From assembly GCA_977020255.1 (NCBI GenBank), contig CDROCS010001558.1, positions 372,001-436,000 on the forward strand: 64,000 nt of DNA. Reading direction: 5' to 3'. Within the stretch, counting starts at the first letter, position 1, and each line of letters starts with the position of its first letter. Made by a program: the position numbers and the translations under genes. Source of the DNA: Obrimoposthia wandeli. Lineage: Eukaryota. Of the stretch, positions 13,664-64,000 are shown in pieces. The notes under the pieces are model-generated. The model did no database searches, was not told the origin of the DNA, and saw nothing but the letters and a program-made list of their open reading frames with translations.

Positions 13664-14024
13664 AATGTATATGTATGTTTGTGTACCCATTGTTATTAGT
13701 TATAACCATCCTCTTTCTGATACCGATTTGTATGATGGTAAAAGTGGGAGTAGGTGGACGTGTCCGGTCTAATCCACACCCCCCCTTCCCCCCACTGTCC
13801 TTTAAAACCGAACATGTGTGTGGAGTGAAATTTCGTGCATGTGTGTGGAAAGAAATTTTCTACCCCCCCCCAACACTCAAAAAAACTAATGAACCCCATA
13901 TAACACCCTTTAAAATTGAAAATCTCATAGTGCTCTCAAAAAAGTGAGGAAGGTCCTGAGAGACCGTCTAGTGAGCCAACGCGTGCCCTTCGGGACTTTA
14001 GGGACTTCATGATTCGATTGAGAA

Positions 14025-54576: not shown

Positions 54577-57500
54577 TCTAAAATCTATTTACTTTTAATA
54601 CATTATCAAAAAAATCACACACTTCTTTATTAAATATTTTGTAAAAAACATTAGAAGCTTAAAGTAACTAAATATTGAAAAATGAATTTAATTTCAAGAA
54701 AATCAATCATAAAAGTTTAATTGCAGTTATGTTAAAAATTAATTTGATTTATTAACTGACAATTAAATTTAGTTTGGTACATCCAATGCCAATCATTCAT
54801 TCTTAAACTGAAGTGATTTTAGGATACCACTGGTTTATTTTTGTACTTTGTACCCTGAACTTTTATTTTAAGTTAAATTAATTTAGAATAATTGATTAAA
54901 TTAATTAAGTATCCGCAATTGTTACTATATCGCGATTTATTTACGTGTGTGCGTGGTATAAATTTACATATAAATAATTGTTATCTCCCGGTTTGTATGC
55001 TTTTTTCTATGGTATTTGTATAAATCATTTAGCAATTTTAGTATGATTAGCTGATCCAGTGATTTTATTACTGTTAAACTAGAGATTCGCGACATATCTT
55101 GCAAATTTACTATCACTTTCACTTGATGCACAATCTAAACCTTTGAATACCTCTGGAAGTCTTCGATTTGCTAATCATTTCAGTAACCCTTAAAAATAAT
55201 AAATAGAGAATGCCAAAACAAGTTTATTTTAAATATTAATAATAAAACATGATAAAACAATATAGTGAAACATAAAAAAATAATAATTTAGTATTAGATT
55301 AAAAATCTTTAAAACTATCGATCAGAGTATTTAGTGGAAGAGCATTGTGAAAAGCGCGATTTTAAAAAGTTATGTTTATAACAAAATTAAAAAAGAATAT
55401 ATTACATGTATGAAAAAACTATTTAGATAATAATCTTAGGGAATATTTGATATACAAGAAAATGTTTGCAGTACCCTTCAAATCACTTCGTCAAGCCACA
55501 TTATAGGAACATAGGTTAAAGGCGACTGATCTAATGCATCAAATATTCACATTCATTACTTACTGTTTCGTGAATTCCTCTTGAATGTACGTATTCTTAA
55601 TGTATTGAGCAGGCACACTATATATATATAAAATGATTATATTCTTACGAAAAGTGTTTCAATTGTTTTTGACAGCCAGAGATTATTGTCTTAATCAAAT
55701 TTGTAAAATTCGATGCATTATATAATATTTTTGTAATCTAACTAGCTTGCTACAGTGTTTATGTAAAAAGTTGCTCTACGTTTATTGTCATCTTACATAG
55801 TTTTGTGCTATACTATCTTATATATACTGTACTCCTAATCAAAATTAATTAAATATTCCAGTTTTGAAACTTAATGTCGAAATTTTACAATAAAACGTTT
55901 ATCATCCATTAATAGTCATTTCCATATTACTTCATAACATTTGTATTAACTCGCCATTTACCATTACATTCTATTAAACAAGAACAGATTTAAAAATTAC
56001 ACTATTGTTTAAGGTGAAATCGTTAAATAAATTAATAAAATTGTTATATATTTAAACTAATTTAAATTAACTTTGCACCGTAGAATCATGCCAGTGTCAA
56101 ATTGAGAGCTTTATGTGTTCATATTTTTATCCTACTATAATTGTTATTAAGCTTAAAAATATATTTGAAAATGTACAAATTATTATTTTTATTTGTATTG
56201 AATAGATAATTTATAAATTTAAATGTTACATTTCTTACTCTATATATAAATTTTATCATAAAATAATGTAATGAAGTCTAAAAGTATTTAAAATGTTCAT
56301 TGATAAAAATAATTATTTAAAAAATAAACAATTTGAAAGTTTGCCTCTATATAAAACATTTTGAACTTACTTTCGTTAAATTACCCTAAAATATAAAACC
56401 CATGAAAAAATAATTCTAAAAGCTTCTAATTTAATTTACAACTATATTTAAATAAAATTAAAATTTTAATGTTTTAAATTAAAATTCTATCATTAGATAA
56501 AGTACAAAAATTATAGACATTTTGATTACACAAACGTTAAAGTGTTTTAGGATTAAGAAAACAAAATTTTGTATCAAAGACGAAATAAAAATTATTTTAA
56601 CAAAAGATATAGACCAATTGAAATTAAATTGAAAAAATTAACATTATTTTAAAACAAATAAAAGTGCAATAATTCAGGTCATATTCTTAACTAAAAAATG
56701 TCCCAATATATATAAAATAATATAGTACACGAATAAAACATTTTACATTCGTAAAGTAATAAGATTATCTTTGAAACAATTAAACGAAAACTTAAAATTG
56801 ATTATATAAATAAGTTTCATGTCTTAATAAATATTTAGTTATTTACATTCTTACAAATAAAAAAGAAATATAATTTAATGTTTAAAAGACGCAAAAATAA
56901 TAAATAAACATTGAAATAAAACATTTTGCACTTTAAACATCAGAAAAACAACTAATAAAATGAAAATTTATGGAAATCAAAATTAATAATAATTAGAACG
57001 ACCCATTTCATTATATTTAAGTACATTTCGTTTAAATTTTGAAATTAATTATATATAACATCAGATTCTTCTTTGTTCAAGATTTCTACTTGTTCATCTA
57101 TTTTATTTCCCAGTTCTTCTTATGAAACAACTGAAGTCTATCATAAATGACATATTTAAGTATTTTCAACATTTATACCATCAGGAGATTATAAAGACCA
57201 TTTCAGTAAATTAATATTGTACATTTGAATGACACCAACAACCCGTTTGGCTATGTGAGGCATTGCATTATTATGTTGGTATGTGTAAGGTAGTCCTAAC
57301 GTATCGTTAAAATGTGCTAAAATATATCATTCAAATTACAATTCATATGTTTCATCAAATGAAAATTCCAATAAAAGTTATAAAACCGTAAACCATAACT
57401 CCTCCTTCCAAAATACTCACAAATCTCTTAAACATGTGTTGGGAATTAAAATATTACAATTTAAATTTAAATCAATTTATCAAAGTGCCCACAGTCGAAC

Positions 57501-57591
57501 AGCAATTGTTGTCAGTGATGTCCTAGTTTTATCTTGTGCTTCGCGGTTGGAAAATTGCCCGCGAAGTAGGAGATAACACAGAAGAAATGAC

Positions 57592-58942
57592 TGTTATATG
57601 TAGAATAGTTACGTATGACTAATTTCCAATACTGTGCTTCTTCCAAAAGTCAGCTTCGCAAAATGTTACAACTCTGGGCAATAAATTCGATCTCCAATAT
57701 TGTGCCTCCTCCAAAAGTTAGCTTTGCAAAATGTTACAACTCTGGGCAATAAATTCAATCTCCAATATTGTGCCTCCTCCAAAAGTTAGCTTTGCAAAAT
57801 ATTACAACTCTGGGCAATAAATTTAATTTCCAATATTGCGCTTTTTTCCCAAAGACTAAAAATGCAAATCTTGTTCTGACATATATTTGTAATACTTCAA
57901 TAAATTAGGAAATTTGTTTTTTGTAACAAATCACTATCGACGATTGCTATTTATAGCAATCGCCCAGTCTAAATGCCAAGAGCGGCGGCAGCAACCGTGT
58001 GCTGATTCAATCGACGATTGCTAAAAATAGCAATCGCCCAAAAGGGAAAAACAACAAGTGTTGCCAGACCGGGACCAAATCAGACACACAGGCCCGGTAA
58101 AACAACGTTGGCGAATTTGTGACATATACAAACACACAGATTGCCCAGATAAAATTCGGCACTTAAATTTTTAGAAAATAGACCGAGAAAAGAGAGATAG
58201 GTAGATTATAGCAATTAAAGATTAAACTAAAACATCTAAAAGTAAAATTGATGATATTATGTGTTTGTATATCTCTGAGGTTCCTGGAGTTACACGGAAG
58301 AAGGTGGGTAGAAGTTACACTGACTAGCTTATTGCAACTATGATACACAAAAGTCGACATACAGGCTTCTGGCGAAGAGTTCTTTAGTGACAATTTGTGT
58401 TGGTCATCTTAAGATGAGATGGGCTAGGTCAGTAGAAAATCAGGGTTGTGTTATGCAGAGAAGTAGACAGAGACAAGGACATAGGGTTGCAGCTAGAACT
58501 GTTTCACAACCCAGGCTGCACCGGCACAGGCAGTCACGCAGTCGACCCATTGGTTTTGATGGCAGCGGTAGACTTGGGTTTTCTCGGGTCTGAGGCGTAC
58601 TGGCCAATACACACAGGGGCGGCTGGGCAAGCGGGAAATTTGTTGTCAGGGAGGCAACTGCTTCCGAGCCGGGATGATTGAAGGTTGTTGCCTCTCCGGA
58701 TGATGATGAAGGGAAAAGGTCTGCTGCTACTGGGCGGTAATATTTTTATGATAAGAATCCATTTTATCAACCGCTTTTTTCGCCGCCTTCCTGATGAGCC
58801 TGGCAAGGCGAAACGGGCTAACAACCCGTCGGAGGCTGAAATTTGAAAAACCTCCCTAATTGTGGGCACTTTAGATTAGTTTATAAAATGTCAATTTAAA
58901 TTGACTTTCTTAATTAATTTAATTTTAATTAAAGACCCAACA
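57592..58942 (+). mobile_element. Solo-LTR-like element carrying a hammerhead ribozyme (copy 1, 1351 bp)
   Basis: Termini TGTTATAT...CCCAACA; 4-bp TSD TGAC (57588-57591, 58943-58946); internal 68-bp tandem repeats (57626-57850); hammerhead 112 nt from the 3' end. Confidence 0.85.
58785..58836 (+). ncRNA. Type I hammerhead ribozyme
   Basis: Stem I GCCTTC/GGAGGC; core CTGATGA; stem II GCCT/AGGC with loop GGCA; GAAA; stem III CGGG/CCCG with loop CTAACAA; GTC cleavage triplet (cut after 58830). Confidence 0.95.
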
Positions 58943-59159
58943 TGACTGCATCCTCTATCGATTTTTTCTGCCTATCCAATATTAAGTGAACCACATACAC
59001 ACATGTTATTTTACTGCTTCTATCTTTGTAGTGGTGCCAATTTACTTGTGTGTCTGCAAATTTATGTAATGTCACTTATAATAGAAAAATTAATATAAAA
59101 TTGTTTGGCATAGAGAGATTTGTTATAATTTCTAAAACTACTTTTTTAAATTGCTACAG

Positions 59160-59460: not shown

Positions 59461-61972
59461 TTAGTTGGAAATAATAATCAAATATAACACATGCCCAATC
59501 TTTTTTGTTTATTTCCATGCCCAAAAAAATAATAAAAATCTGCCTTCCTCACTTAATACTAAAAATAGTGAGTTGCATACGCCGCTCTTCAATTTGTGTC
59601 AATTGGTATTTCTTTTTATTTTCAGTCAATTTTTTTCCTTTAGTATATTGCGTAGTATAAACTACTTACTTTCTTTAAGAACTTATTGGTGGGTACATTT
59701 TCTGAAATATTTATTTTTATTTTTAACACAGTTGTATTTTGCTTTTTTATCTCCTTATACTTTATTTTAATTTGACAAACAAGATTTTGATATTATATCG
59801 AACTGGAACTTTGACTTATAATTTTGATTTAGATTTATTCATTTTGGGTATACTAAGTTTGAACTTTTTAAAATTTTCCGTTATTTTTTTTCGCACATTT
59901 CTTTTTTGGCAAATAAAATACTTTATGGAATCAGGAACTAATTTTCCATTCAAACATTCAATCTAAAATATATTAACTCAGAAGTACTATAAATAAACTT
60001 AAAAATAAGATTGTTTCAATGATTAACACTGTTTTATTCGTGAGTTTTAAAATATAATTCCATAGATCTTTATTTAAAATAAAAATTTATAATTAAACAG
60101 CATATTCATTTATTTGATATAAATATCAATTGTTACTTAAACAAATAACTTATTTATTATATATTTTACTTTAAAAAATCATTAATAATTAAACAGATTT
60201 TTACTCACAAAATCTGTAAAATATTTAATTTGTTTATTATATTAAAAAAATACAATATAATTACAATAATGTTTACAATAAAATATTACAATTTTTGAAA
60301 TATATAATAATTATATCTACTTACAAGTTACAGTAGATTAACACTTAAACTTTCAATATATTTTCTTTTAAAGGTCATAAATTAAATTAATTAATACCAT
60401 GTGTGTAAGAAAATGCAGATATTTCAAAATAACCTTGTTGTAAAAATCAATTTAAACATAATTATAATTTTTTAACTATAATATTTTACAATAATAAAAT
60501 TGTGAAACCATTTTATGTTTGTCAAAATGTTACTAATAATTAAGAACCAAAAATAAAATTAAATACATGTTATTTACAATTTAGTAATAAATTATTATTT
60601 ATACTTTTCAGCAGTAAATAATCATACATTTTGTACCAATTTTTTAGTTAGATATTTGACCAATTGTTGCCTTGCAAAAAAAATGATATAAATCTATGGT
60701 TTTATAATGAAAATATGCTTAAATCTGTGATTTTACAATACTTTTAAGGTTTAAATATCATATGATACCTTAAAAACAGTAAAATAATGTAAAAAAATAT
60801 TCAGTATATTTGTATACTATCTTTTTTATTACTGGGATCATAGTAATAGAAACAAAATTTTCAATTTTTACTCATAACTATTACCTAAAGTGGTCAAACG
60901 ATCGATTATAAAGAACATTGAGAGCTTTTATATTTCAATACTTTCTTTTACATAAGATTCTCTAAATCTGATACGAATACGCCACTTCAAAGTTTTCAGT
61001 AAATACTGATTGACTGCTGATTGACTAAAGAAAGCCTACATGATGGTTTAATTAGTAAGTATTACATGGTAGGTAAACAAGTTGATAAGAATAGAGCAGA
61101 TAAGTCTAAGTAATATAGTAAATAATACATTTTAGAGTCTTTACATATAATACTTATATTAACTTATTTATTATTTAAATTTAATACATATAACATAGTT
61201 ACAATAAAAGCTCAGTCTAGCACACGTCATTTTCGCACATGCTGCACCGGACAACAGAATGACAAGAAAATACAAAGGCATTGTACGAAGAACACTTTTG
61301 TTTTATTTTTCGCTCAAGCTCCAAAGTGCTCTGGCAACTTTTCCGTTGTTGTGGCAGTCAGTTACAGTTGTTCCTTAATAGGTGACTCGACGCAAACCAA
61401 CTTGGTTGATGCCCGAATCATTGCACAAATGTTGGTCAGTCGTGGTCGTCTGTTAACAAGTGGCGGCACATCTCATAGCCAAGTTTAACTTTAAATTTGT
61501 AGTCAGTTTCATTGTCGGCTGAGGATTCGTTGTTGAAGATCATGCAGCGTAGCATGCAGTATTCAAAAGAGGAAATTCAGTGCATAAAGTAATCGCTAAC
61601 ATTTGTATTTTGTAGCATATGTTTGGAAAAACTTGTCCAGAATATCCACTTCGGATTTAGTGAGGCTGTAAAATTGGACAACCGGGCTTTTACCTTCCAG
61701 CAAGTTTTGTTCAGACCAATGTTGAGATAACAGAAGAAGAACAGTTAACTTTTTCTTGTTTCAGAATGAACATAGCGTATTGAAAATGTTGTCCTTGTAG
61801 AAGTAAATTGTGTCACCGTGTGTCCTGTTCACTGAACTTTTTGCTGTATGTGGAATTTCATGTCGATTCAATTTTATGGTTCCTACTATAGTCGTTTTTG
61901 AGCAAGAAAACGCTAGAACAGTTTTAGTGACACAAAGAAGTTATCAGCTGTCGACGTTTCAAAATACATACG

Positions 61973-63059
61973 TGTTGGGATTTAAAATTAATTAATTTTT
62001 GTCAATTTAAATTGACATTTTACAGAGGTCCCCACAATCAGGGAGGTATTCATTATCAGCCTCCGACGGGGTAAAAACCCCGTTTCGCCTTGCCAGGCTC
62101 GTCAGGGAGACGGCTAGATAAGTGGTTTTTACCACAAAAGTTTTCTGCCCAACTACTACCACCTCTCCAGTCAGCAGCAACAACACCGGCTGCACTATCT
62201 CTGACGCAAATGTCACTCCCTCGCTCATCTCCGTCATCCATGAAGACAACCTTTAAGTACAGCGATCTCTCTCTCTCCCTCTCTCCTCCACCTTCCTCTA
62301 TCGTCATCCAGAGAAACTGCATCATCATCATCATCAGCAGCAGCAACATCATCATCATTCACACATTTCGGGATTTCTCTTCTGATTCAGCGGCCACATT
62401 GGCTATGCGTGACAGTGTGTCTCAACTACAGCAGTAACTATAGTGGCAGCAGCATCAGTCGATAATGTGGTATTGACCTGCATCCATGTGGGCGACTTAT
62501 CTCCCTGGCGCCATTATCTCTCCACAACCGCAGCTATCTCCATTTGCTACCAGCTATCTCTACCTGCCAGATCTTCTCCTCGTGTCGGAGTCGTGCCTAC
62601 CGGTAGCGGTCTTAAAATATGTATATGGCCTACCAAATTCCCAACTGTGCAGATGCAGTGCTGTATGTCTGGGATTAAATATAAATCCTGTATAGCAGCT
62701 AAAAATAAACACACAAAAAATTTACTTTGAATTTTCGACAAAAATTATTGAACATTGAATATTCTGCGAAGTATATACCAAAAAATTACAAAACTATTAA
62801 ATCAAATTGAAACTATTTGAAATTATTTGATCAACAATTTGGAAACTATTAAATCAATTTGAAACTATTTGATCAACAATTTGGAAACTATTAAATCAAT
62901 TGAAAACTTTTTGATCAACAATTAGCAAACTATTAAATCAATTTGAAACTATTTGATCACCACGGAAACAAGAAACAATTTCATTAATATTGTTGCTATT
63001 ATTATTTGATCATCAATATAATTTTGTTTGATTATTTGTTGCTTTGGAACAATATAACA
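61973..63059 (-). mobile_element. Solo-LTR-like element carrying a hammerhead ribozyme (copy 2, 1087 bp)
   Basis: On minus, termini TGTTATAT...CCCAACA; 4-bp TSD TACG on plus (61969-61972, 63060-63063); 42-bp tandem repeats (62791-62960). Removing it restores the piggyBac frame VMELRMYFETSTADNFF. Confidence 0.88.
62059..62111 (-). ncRNA. Type I hammerhead ribozyme
   Basis: Minus strand GTCTCC CTGACGA GCCT GGCA AGGC GAAA CGGGG TTTTTA CCCCG TC GGAGGC: intact core, changed stem I/III sequence with pairing retained; cut after the C opposite 62065. Confidence 0.95.
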
Positions 63060-64000
63060 TACGTAGCTCCATTACTATTGCCAAAGGAATTGAGGATAAT
63101 ACAGCCTTCTTTTGAAGATATAGAGTGTCATAGCTGATGTAAACCAGATATATCAAGGAGAATGCATTGTTGTTGATCACCCAATATATCTTAATGCAAA
63201 ATTTACCAGCTTTTGTAGGTATGCATTGTCTGAAGCTTACACATTCATGAAATTTGATAAACTGATCATCCACGGTCAATAATGGTTCTCCGACGAATAG
63301 TTGCTTTGAAGAGCATCCTTGAGAAGAATGACAATGTTTCTTATCGCAGCAATTTTTTTACGATTTATCGTGACGTAAAGTACCATTAAAACAGAAAGCA
63401 GTTTTCAACTGCTCAAATTGTTAAACACACATCGTCACATATGCTTTGAATCCACCAAAATTGAATAGTGATATGAATGTATTTTATTTCAAAATCTAAA
63501 ATACCTTGATAAAAACTGTTTCAAATGTTTTGAAAACCATATCAAACTTCAAGGTAAAGTAGAAAATTGATCAAAAGTGTTTAATAATAAAATATTTTAT
63601 GAAAATTTACCGTTTTACAACATTCAGTCTGTAATTTATTTTAAAATATATCAAGTAAATTCAACACTTGTTAAAATTATAATGTCAAATGAAATCTGCT
63701 ACATATAGCATAGATCCTATATCAACTGTATTTAAATATGAAAAAATACTAGGAAAAATACTAACGGCTGTTGTTAAGATAAAACAGTCAAAAATTATGG
63801 TTGAATTCCCTGAAAGTTAATAATTGCATTAATAAAACCATTGATCAAAGTCATAAATGGAGATAAAATAAACCTATCAAATAAAAGACATAGTTAGAAG
63901 AAAAGGTTTACTCCCTATTTACCAGACAGTTTATATAAGTTAGCATTTGTTAGGTTCCAAAACGGACAGTTAAATTACGATAATAAATAAAATTGGCTAT

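What the first reader, a model, noticed from the sequence alone, without database searches (positions are those of the whole stretch)
57592..58942. Animal LTR-type element with a built-in hammerhead ribozyme (candidate LTR retrozyme or ribozyme-processed LTR retrotransposon family)
Seen: a 1351-bp unit with TG...CA termini (TGTTATAT...CCCAACA), an exact 4-bp TSD (TGAC), U3-like tandem repeats, and a canonical type I hammerhead (CUGAUGA/GAAA/GUC) cutting 112 nt before the 3' end. Known: 4-bp TSD plus TG/CA is the Ty3/gypsy integrase signature. LTR retrozymes with hammerheads in their LTRs are described in plants, whereas metazoan hammerheads are mostly linked to Penelope-like elements and non-LTR tandem retrozymes. 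Inference: this is a solo LTR of an animal LTR element whose RNA ends are made by self-cleavage (LTR-to-LTR unit RNA, possibly circular) rather than by the usual R-region polyadenylation.
Basis: partly seen in the sequence, partly recalled or inferred. Interest (0 to 1): 0.92.

Follow-up and report, generated by a model that had tools for sequence, protein, structure and literature searches.

The report
Antisense hammerhead ribozyme in Gypsy LTRs

Summary
Observation confirmed. Window 57592-58942 is a TG...CA unit with an exact 4-bp duplication (TGAC) and 68-bp tandem repeats. It holds a complete type I hammerhead at 58785-58836, cutting after 58830, 112 nt from the end.

It is a solo LTR. The same repeat occurs in same-strand pairs, 99.6-99.8% identical and 13-14.6 kb apart. 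The pairs flank a Ty3/gypsy-type interior: Gag fused to a Monjiviricetes-type glycoprotein, then PR, RT, RNase H, IN and an ISG20/SDN1-like exonuclease.

The hammerhead looks real. Its core pattern occurs about 6,250 times in the genome, across many LTR families that share only this ~175-300-nt end module. In 37 distinct versions the core is near-invariant, N7 and loop III vary freely, H17 is never G, and 11 of 16 pairs show compensatory changes. Diverged relatives pass Rfam's Hammerhead_1 cut-off.

All ORFs and the tRNA-Trp primer-binding site lie on the opposite strand. The ribozyme is antisense, at the outer (5') edge of U3, so it cannot make the ends of the genomic RNA. It is not an LTR retrozyme or a Penelope pseudo-LTR.

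The most likely role, inferred only, is cutting antisense transcripts at the LTR edge. No RNA data exist for this organism.

The scan had already noted the same antisense hammerhead elsewhere in this genome.

The parts
57588..57591 (.). Left copy of the 4-bp target-site duplication (TGAC)
   Evidence: Read directly. Paralogous copies of the flanking repeat lack the 1351 bp (joints).
57592..58942 (-). Solo LTR, 1351 bp. On the element's sense (-) strand it reads TGTTGGG...ATATAACA; on + it reads TGTTATAT...CCCAACA.
   Evidence: At least 42 genomic matches, many in same-strand pairs 13-14.6 kb apart. LTR pairs are 99.6-99.8% identical. Strand is set by the ORFs and PBS.
58943..58946 (.). Right copy of the target-site duplication (TGAC)
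   Evidence: Nine solo LTRs of the family group have perfect 4-bp duplications.
57621..57838 (.). 68-bp tandem repeat, 3.2 copies. It lies at the U5-proximal end of the LTR in true orientation, and its sequence and copy number differ between subfamilies.
   Evidence: Most other copies match only from query position 290-346 onward.
57938..58042 (-). Two hairpins (CGACGATTGC...GCAATCG) with TATA-like loops; on the - strand one reads TATAAATA. Candidate core promoter block of the LTR (inferred).
   Evidence: Sequence. This is the second most widely shared block of the LTR in DNA contigs (depth peak at 57931-58048). Some LTR variants keep only this block plus the hammerhead module (C6788 and C1743).
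58785..58836 (+). Type I hammerhead ribozyme motif with predicted cleavage between 58830 and 58831. It is antisense to the element's genes.
   Evidence: (93.1 bits with model R1).
58831..58855 (+). Alternative hairpin GGAGG...CCUCC that can sequester the 3' strand of helix I after cleavage (inferred).
   Evidence: Sequence. Kept in the A-type and B-type families and the L051/L053/L059 types.
58890..58905 (.). 16-bp palindrome GTCAATTTAAATTGAC in the conserved end module
   Evidence: Conserved between LTR families that are otherwise unalignable.
61973..63059 (+). Second, diverged solo LTR in sense orientation, with TACG duplications at 61969-61972 and 63060-63063. It shares only its first ~175 nt with the LTR at 57592-58942.
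62059..62111 (-). Hammerhead of the second LTR: CUGACGA core, a 5-bp helix III, and wobble changes in helix I.
   Evidence: (90.1 bits).
57437..57591 (+). Start of a related LTR (TGTTGGG..., conserved hairpin at 57526-57579), interrupted by the solo LTR and continuing after 58946. It has no intact hammerhead.
   Evidence: Model R1 finds nothing there at E <= 1. Contigs end at 57437 with diverse flanks.

Best explanation
Shown:
- The unit is a solo LTR of an abundant, recently active, ~15-kb Ty3/gypsy-type retroelement.
- In sense order the element is: 5' LTR, tRNA-Trp primer-binding site, leader, Gag fused to a Monjiviricetes-type fusion glycoprotein, PR, RT, RNase H, IN, unknown ORFs, an ISG20/SDN1-like exonuclease, 3' LTR.
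- A conserved end module of ~175-300 nt at the outer (5') edge of U3 encodes, on the antisense strand, a complete type I hammerhead.
- This module is shared by many LTR families whose remaining LTR sequence cannot be aligned.

Inferred:
- The ribozyme is active in RNA copied from the antisense strand and cuts it 112 nt inside the LTR edge.
- In the 3' LTR, the cut falls just before antisense transcripts enter the coding interior. Such transcripts could start in the LTR or read in from the flank. The cut separates the capped leader from an uncapped 5'-OH antisense body.
- In the 5' LTR, the cut falls just before antisense transcripts leave the element.
- The likely benefit to the element is fewer long antisense RNAs. 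That would mean less double-stranded RNA and small-RNA silencing, and less read-out into host DNA.
- The ribozyme plays no part in forming the ends of the sense genomic RNA. Those ends probably follow the usual route from a TATA-like box to an ATTAAA signal in the LTR.
For: LTR identity:
- Same-strand paired copies, 99.6-99.8% identical.
- 4-bp duplications in full-length copies (CAAT, TATG) and in nine solo LTRs.
- A solo LTR on contig C794 sits at exactly the locus that carries a full-length copy on C906.

Orientation:
- PR/RT/RNaseH/IN, Gag, glycoprotein and exonuclease ORFs are all on the strand opposite the hammerhead in three copies.
- The primer-binding site TGGTGAGCTCGAC lies 2 nt after the LTR end. 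It matches the 3' end of tRNA-Trp genes (12 of 13, plus CCA). Other copies extend the match into the T-loop.
- 6 of 6 loci chosen by the primer-binding-site pattern alone carry the hammerhead on the opposite strand.

Ribozyme:
- About 6,250 genomic matches to the core pattern against 0 for the reversed control.
- In 37 distinct versions, C3, A13 and A15.1 are invariant and the other core positions are kept in 35-36 of 37.
- N7 is free (U17/C16/A4) and loop III is hypervariable in sequence and length.
- U16.1 is kept in 36 of 36, and H17 is C or U, never G.
- 91.3% of cells pair, against 29-55% in slid controls.
- 11 of 16 pairs show double changes, with 72 such cells against 24.6 in shuffles (0 of 500 shuffles reach this).
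- Six diverged relatives exceed the Rfam RF00163 gathering score. All lie 100-230 nt before a ...CCCAACA LTR end.

Module conservation:
- The two LTRs in the window align only over the first ~175 nt.
- In DNA contigs, words from the module are about 150 times deeper than words from the LTR body.
Against: - No RNA evidence at all. Only DNA-type contig runs hold the sequence, so neither antisense transcription nor cleavage is shown.
- The helices pair almost as well on the complementary strand (89.4% against 91.3%). Only the core consensus assigns the strand.
- The whole end module is conserved, including the palindrome and other non-ribozyme parts. Some of that conservation may serve the sense RNA or integration.
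- A related, apparently abundant LTR (57437 onward) has no intact hammerhead, so the ribozyme is not indispensable for spread.
- Rfam does not report the window's own copy.
- The proposed benefit (limiting antisense RNA) is conjecture.
Confidence: 0.55

Rival explanations
1. Passenger or relic. The hammerhead was captured once, for example from a ribozyme-bearing retroelement. It persists because the U3 edge module is constrained for other reasons: integrase recognition, plus-strand priming next to the LTR edge, or 3'-UTR structure of the sense RNA. On this view, cleavage of antisense RNA is absent or irrelevant to the element.
For: - The whole ~175-300-nt module is conserved, not only the ribozyme.
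- The helices pair nearly as well on the sense strand.
- A related LTR family lacks an intact motif.
- No canonical polypurine tract sits next to the LTR, so this edge may carry unusual cis signals.
Against: - A constraint on the sense strand does not predict exact retention of all hammerhead core positions.
- It also does not predict free variation precisely at N7 and loop III, nor H17 never being G, across 37 versions and many families.
- It does not predict compensatory changes in all three helices.
Confidence: 0.2
2. Retrozyme-like antisense unit RNA. Transcripts of the hammerhead strand that span two ribozymes are cut to unit length and circularised. The two ribozymes could be the two LTRs of one element or adjacent LTRs. 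This would give a second, non-coding RNA life cycle or a regulatory circular RNA.
For: - Two same-strand hammerheads delimit every full-length copy.
- An earlier, unchecked scan note reports a five-ribozyme tandem array elsewhere in this genome (s1-224191).
- Plant retrozymes show that such a cycle exists (PMC4918200).
Against: - The unit between ribozymes is about 13.9 kb of antisense coding sequence and lacks a primer-binding site on that strand.
- No short tandem arrays were seen among about 250 listed hits.
- My search for LTR-to-LTR junctions found a target-site preference, not tandem LTRs.
Confidence: 0.1
3. One reading: the ribozyme makes the ends of the element's own genomic (sense) RNA in place of R-region polyadenylation.
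For: LTR placement of the ribozyme and a 4-bp duplication, as in plant LTR retrozymes.
Against: The ribozyme is on the strand opposite all ORFs and the tRNA-Trp primer-binding site, in every copy examined.
Confidence: 0.02

Closest known systems
Plant LTR retrozymes (Cervera et al. 2016, PMC4918200)
   Same: - Hammerhead embedded in both LTRs.
- TG...CA ends and 4-bp duplications.
- Link to Ty3/gypsy machinery.
   Different: - Retrozymes are small, non-coding and non-autonomous, and carry type III hammerheads.
- Their ribozyme is on the same strand as the PBS and PPT, and that RNA becomes a circular template.
- Here the element is ~15 kb and coding, the ribozyme is type I, and it lies on the strand opposite the PBS and genes.
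Hammerheads in Penelope-like element pseudo-LTRs and Terminons (PMC4209133; cited in PMC7229834)
   Same: Type I hammerhead in the terminal repeat of an animal retroelement, present in high copy number.
   Different: - There is no Penelope-type RT or GIY-YIG gene here.
- These are true LTRs with integrase-type ends, 4-bp duplications and a tRNA primer site.
- The hammerhead has a stable 4-5-bp helix III, unlike the minimal dimeric Penelope variants (the last point is from my own knowledge of that literature).
Metazoan non-LTR retrozymes (PMC7229834; bioRxiv 10.64898/2026.07.22.740005)
   Same: Canonical type I hammerhead in an invertebrate-type genome.
   Different: Those are 170-400-nt tandem repeats without LTRs, PBS or PPT. 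Here the motif is dispersed, one per LTR, and no short tandem arrays were found.
HDV-like ribozymes at the 5' end of R2/RTE-type non-LTR retrotransposons (own knowledge)
   Same: A self-cleaving ribozyme built into an autonomous retroelement to process a co-transcript at the element boundary.
   Different: Those act on the sense RNA and define its 5' end. This one is a different ribozyme class and sits on the antisense strand.

Membership tests
Hammerhead ribozyme, type I | Conserved catalytic core: CUGANGA, GAAA, and U16.1-H17 with H not G | tested here: met
   The window copy has all of these. Across 37 distinct versions each core position is kept in 35-37; N7 is free; H17 is C in 34 and U in 2.
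Hammerhead ribozyme, type I | Three helices around the core, supported by covariation | tested here: met
   91.3% of cells pair. 11 of 16 pairs show double changes, and 0 of 500 shuffles reach the covariation score. A smaller hand-made alignment gives the same direction.
Hammerhead ribozyme, type I | Topology: helix I open, helices II and III closed by loops | tested here: met
   Sequence and minimum-energy fold.
Hammerhead ribozyme, type I | Reaches the Rfam RF00163 gathering score | tested here: inconclusive
   The window copy is not reported even at E <= 10. Six diverged homologues in the same genome score 35.8-38.5 bits against a cut-off of 34.
Hammerhead ribozyme, type I | Site-specific self-cleavage | not testable with these tools
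   No RNA runs are available. This needs in vitro transcription.
Ty3/gypsy (Metaviridae-type) LTR retrotransposon | Two near-identical direct LTRs with TG...CA ends and 4-5-bp duplications | tested here: met
Ty3/gypsy (Metaviridae-type) LTR retrotransposon | Domain order PR-RT-RNaseH-IN with gypsy-type RNase H and H2C2 integrase domains | tested here: met
   Pfam hits PF00078, PF17917, PF17919, PF17921 and PF00665, in that order on one strand.
Ty3/gypsy (Metaviridae-type) LTR retrotransposon | Primer-binding site complementary to a tRNA 3' end next to the 5' LTR | tested here: met
   The match is to tRNA-Trp.
Ty3/gypsy (Metaviridae-type) LTR retrotransposon | Polypurine tract immediately upstream of the 3' LTR | tested here: not met
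   The sequence upstream of the 3' LTR reads ...TATACCCCCATAGGAT, which is not purine-rich.
LTR retrozyme | Small non-coding, non-autonomous interior | tested here: not met
   The interior is 12.6 kb and holds gag, env-like and pol ORFs.
LTR retrozyme | Hammerhead on the same strand as the PBS and PPT, so that the cleaved RNA is the reverse-transcription template | tested here: not met
   The PBS and ORFs are on the opposite strand. The polarity of plant retrozymes is taken from PMC4918200.
Penelope-like element pseudo-LTR | Flanks a Penelope RT (with or without GIY-YIG) ORF, often in tandem or partial-tandem copies | tested here: not met
   The interior encodes a retroviral-type PR-RT-RH-IN.
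Metazoan non-LTR retrozyme | Head-to-tail repeats of about 170-400 nt, one hammerhead each | tested here: not met
   Listed hits are single or lie 13-14 kb apart. There is no tandem repeat over the ribozyme.

The most novel reading that the evidence does not exclude
The antisense hammerhead may be an active counter-defence device of an env-bearing Ty3/gypsy lineage. It would decapitate antisense transcripts at the LTR edge and so starve the host's small-RNA silencing of double-stranded or antisense precursor. It might act together with the element's own ISG20/SDN1-like (small-RNA-degrading type) exonuclease. This would be the first ribozyme known to act for a retroelement on the strand it does not use for replication.
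Probability: 0.12. Interest if true: 0.85.

Novelty: new variant of a known kind. Interest (0 to 1): 0.62.

Why it matters
In the papers I could search, animal hammerheads are tied to Penelope-like elements, Terminons and non-LTR retrozymes. LTR-borne hammerheads are a plant retrozyme feature, and there the ribozyme is on the template strand.

Here a canonical type I hammerhead is kept, with covariation, in thousands of true LTRs of autonomous-type, glycoprotein-bearing Gypsy elements of an animal. It is always on the strand the element does not use for its genes or for priming.

That breaks the usual logic that the ribozyme processes the element's own RNA. It points instead to selection acting on antisense transcripts of a retroelement. 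The idea is directly testable by cleavage assays and strand- and end-specific RNA sequencing in this species.

Tried and rejected
1. Rfam scan of the window at gathering score and at E <= 10. No hammerhead was reported for the window copy. Only relatives elsewhere pass.

2. RNA evidence. One run search found only four DNA-type contig runs from one sample. Laying them gave copy-number and empty-site information but nothing about RNA ends or strand.

3. Cross-species test. The nearest RT-IN relatives are only 42-52% identical. Three of their contigs hold no hammerhead by model R1 or by Rfam. This is a weak test, because those contigs may not reach an LTR.

4. Metagenome scan with the core-plus-helix-II pattern. 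It found 19 contigs, all unrelated GC-rich hammerheads with no flank homology. They are not relatives.

5. Tandem-LTR or retrozyme-like arrays. A search for an LTR end followed by 0-6 nt and an LTR start gave 59 hits, enriched for 4-nt spacers. The four loci fetched are LTR ends next to unrelated DNA that begins TGTTA. This is a target-site preference, not arrays.

6. Strand assignment from G-U pairs. The asymmetry is too small to use (36 G-U cells against 25 A-C cells).

7. Loop II to upstream-GCC pseudoknot (the idea comes from the earlier scan note s1-204595). Both partners are conserved, but loop variants show no compensating change, so it is unsupported.

8. A primer-binding site on the hammerhead strand (TGGGGGTATAC after the LTR). 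I rejected it in favour of the tRNA-Trp site on the other strand, which extends into the T-loop in other copies.

9. Pfam scan of the short ORFs on the hammerhead strand. The call failed on a coordinate slip and was not repeated, so those ORFs of 91-170 aa remain unexamined.

Full report
**1. Observation**

The unit is as described.
- TGTTATAT begins at 57592 and CCCAACA ends at 58942. TGAC flanks both sides, at 57588-57591 and 58943-58946.
- A 68-bp unit is repeated 3.2 times at 57621-57838.
- A complete hammerhead lies at 58785-58836. It has helix I GCCUUC/GGAGGC, CUGAUGA, helix II GCCU-GGCA-AGGC, GAAA, helix III CGGG-7 nt-CCCG, then U and C17 at 58830.
- The predicted cut is therefore 112 nt before the end of the unit.
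- The minimum-energy fold of 58776-58842 is exactly this junction. Its energy is unremarkable against shuffles (z = -0.96).
- The core-plus-helix-II pattern occurs twice in the window, at 58791 (+) and 62082 (-), against 0.00 expected.
- Rfam reports nothing for the window at gathering score or at E <= 10.

**2. It is an LTR**

- A search of the window's own genome (1.35 Gb) found at least 42 matches. Many are same-strand pairs 13.2-14.7 kb apart.
- I fetched three such pairs. Their terminal repeats are 99.6-99.8% identical over 1.14-1.32 kb.
- Two of the three have perfect 4-bp duplications, CAAT and TATG. The third has none.
- Nine solo LTRs from several subfamilies also have perfect 4-bp duplications next to TGTT...AACA ends.
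- A solo LTR on contig C794 has the same flanks as the full-length copy on C906 (100% and 99.5% identity). The two are allelic or haplotig forms, which points to recent LTR-LTR recombination.
- DNA contigs of the only public runs that hold the sequence include copies of the flanking repeat without the 1351 bp.

**3. The element and its true orientation**

- Every long ORF in the three full-length copies lies on the strand opposite the hammerhead.
- Pfam scans give this order on that strand:
  - Retrotrans_gag, fused in one frame to a Monjiviricetes-type viral fusion glycoprotein;
  - aspartyl protease, RT, RNase H, and integrase (H2C2 zinc finger plus core);
  - ORFs with no family match;
  - an RNase_T-family exonuclease, whose nearest solved relatives are ISG20, Arabidopsis SDN1 and ISG20L2.
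- All three copies carry frame breaks. I describe them only.
- In this orientation the 5' LTR ends ...ATATAACA and is followed by AT and then TGGTGAGCTCGAC.
- A pattern built from that site's complement plus a T-loop found other elements whose site extends to TTCGAATCACGTCGAGCTCA-CCA. It also found a tandem array of tRNA-Trp(CCA) genes ending ...TTCGAATCACGTCGGGCTCA.
- The primer-binding site therefore matches tRNA-Trp in 12 of 13 positions.
- All six loci picked by that pattern alone carry a hammerhead 0.6-1.3 kb away, on the strand opposite the primer site.
The 'U3-like' repeats lie at the U5 end, and the hammerhead is antisense, at the outer edge of U3.
- On the sense strand the LTR has a TATAAATA inside a hairpin near 57950 and an ATTAAA near 57822. 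From these I infer a U3 of about 1 kb and an ordinary R region. This is inference only.
- No purine-rich tract precedes the 3' LTR.

**4. Is the hammerhead real?**

- The 28-nt core pattern, allowing up to 3 mismatches, occurs about 6,250 times in the genome. The reversed control gives 0.
- The two LTRs in the window align only over their first ~175 nt in sense orientation. That stretch is the ribozyme module plus a 16-bp palindrome and the TGTTGGG end.
- Many further LTR families share the first 250-305 nt.
- In DNA contigs, words from the module are about 150 times deeper than words from the LTR body.
- A search of the genome with Rfam Hammerhead_1 found six hits above the gathering score. 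These have different helices: AUCUCC/GGAGAU and GUCCCC/GGGGAC for helix I, GUCC/GGAC for helix II, and CCGG/CCGG for helix III. A further hit just below the cut-off (33.6 bits) has CAGUU/AACUG for helix III. Each hit lies 100-230 nt before a ...CCCAACA end.
- I built a covariance model from 12 versions and collected 43 matches, 37 of them distinct.
- In that set 91.3% of cells pair, against 29-55% when the partners are slid.
- 11 of 16 pairs show changes on both sides. There are 72 such cells against 24.6 in shuffles, and 0 of 500 shuffles reach the covariation score.
- Column counts:
  - C3 37/37, U4 35, G5 36, A6 36;
  - N7 is U in 17, C in 16 and A in 4;
  - G8 35, A9 35, G12 35, A13 37, A14 36, A15.1 37;
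  - U16.1 36/36;
  - H17 is C in 34 and U in 2, never G.
- Loop III varies freely in length and sequence.
- This is the pattern expected of a selected hammerhead.
- The helices alone do not tell the strand, since they pair 89.4% on the complement. Only the core does.
- Activity itself is untested.

**5. What it probably does**

- The sense genomic RNA carries only the complement, so the ribozyme can act only on antisense transcripts.
- In the 3' LTR the cut falls just before such transcripts enter the coding interior. In the 5' LTR it falls just before they leave the element.
- My best reading (inferred) is that it truncates and uncaps antisense RNA. That would limit double-stranded RNA, small-RNA silencing or read-out into the host.
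- Rivals:
  - a passenger motif kept by other constraints on the U3 edge, supported by conservation of the whole module and by a related LTR at 57437 onward that lacks an intact motif;
  - a retrozyme-like antisense unit RNA, for which I found no arrays;
- No RNA runs exist for the organism.

**6. Comparison with what is known**

- In plant LTR retrozymes the hammerhead is type III, the element is non-coding, and the ribozyme strand carries the PBS and PPT (PMC4918200).
- Animal type I hammerheads are described in Penelope pseudo-LTRs, Terminons and tandem non-LTR retrozymes that lack LTR, PBS and PPT (PMC7229834, PMC4209133, bioRxiv 10.64898/2026.07.22.740005).
- Two full-text searches found no report of a hammerhead in LTRs of autonomous animal LTR retrotransposons.
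- I therefore file this as a new variant of a known kind: a ribozyme in a retroelement terminal repeat.
- Earlier notes of this scan describe the same antisense hammerhead in Gypsy LTRs elsewhere in this genome. My tests agree with them. They add that the repeats are true LTRs and that a tRNA-Trp primer site fixes the polarity.

**7. Limits**

- Cross-species tests were weak or negative.
- Copy numbers are lower bounds.
- The promoter and poly(A) assignments, and the function, are inferences.

Noticed in passing
L035:3480-7787 (+), from G000:C1900; also L031:7144-9180 (-): The element's Gag (Retrotrans_gag) runs in one open frame into a Monjiviricetes-type viral fusion glycoprotein. The C-terminal part of the glycoprotein is in frame with the aspartyl protease. 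An env-like gene placed between gag and pol, rather than after pol, is an unusual layout.
   Followed up: partly
L031:1806-2933 (-); L036:3509-4063 (+): The last ORF before the 3' LTR is an RNase_T-family 3'-5' exonuclease. Its nearest solved relatives are ISG20, Arabidopsis small-RNA-degrading nuclease 1 and ISG20L2 (E from 2e-5 to 1e-4). This is unusual cargo for an LTR element and could be relevant to RNA silencing.
   Followed up: partly
window 57437-57591 and 58947 onward: A related LTR (TGTTGGG start, conserved hairpin at 57526-57579) was split by the solo-LTR insertion. It has only a degenerate remnant where relatives carry the hammerhead. It appears highly repeated in DNA contigs.
   Followed up: partly
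G000:C794:499718-503755 (L006) compared with G000:C906:842741-858690: The same insertion site, with identical flanks and CAAT duplication, carries a solo LTR on one contig and a full-length ~15-kb element on the other. This is probably a haplotype polymorphism.
   Followed up: yes
G000:C5734:143177-151119 (L067 covers 143000-144300): A tandem array of at least 40 tRNA-Trp(CCA) genes with a ~207-bp period.
   Followed up: partly
Flanks of LTR insertions: After the 4-bp duplication the target DNA usually begins with T, often TG or TGTTA. 'LTR end, 4 nt, TGTTA' occurs 26 times among 59 pattern hits. This suggests a palindromic target-site preference that mimics LTR ends.
   Followed up: partly
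Immediately upstream of the 3' LTR in sense orientation (/scratch C906 coordinates 1542-1580, reverse complement): There is no purine-rich tract at the plus-strand primer position. The conserved sequence there reads ...GTCAGAGGTCTGAC TTTGTATACCCCCATAGGAT.
   Followed up: no
Leader of the element, /scratch C906 coordinates 13695-14014: 80-bp tandem repeats (about 4 copies) between the primer-binding site and gag. Repeats in the U5 part of the LTR differ in sequence and number between subfamilies.
   Followed up: no
L077-L095 (JGI metagenome contigs): Nineteen unrelated GC-rich contigs carry hammerheads with the same helix II and loop (GCCC-GGCA-GGGC). One group of seven near-identical loci may be a distinct environmental hammerhead family.
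   Followed up: partly
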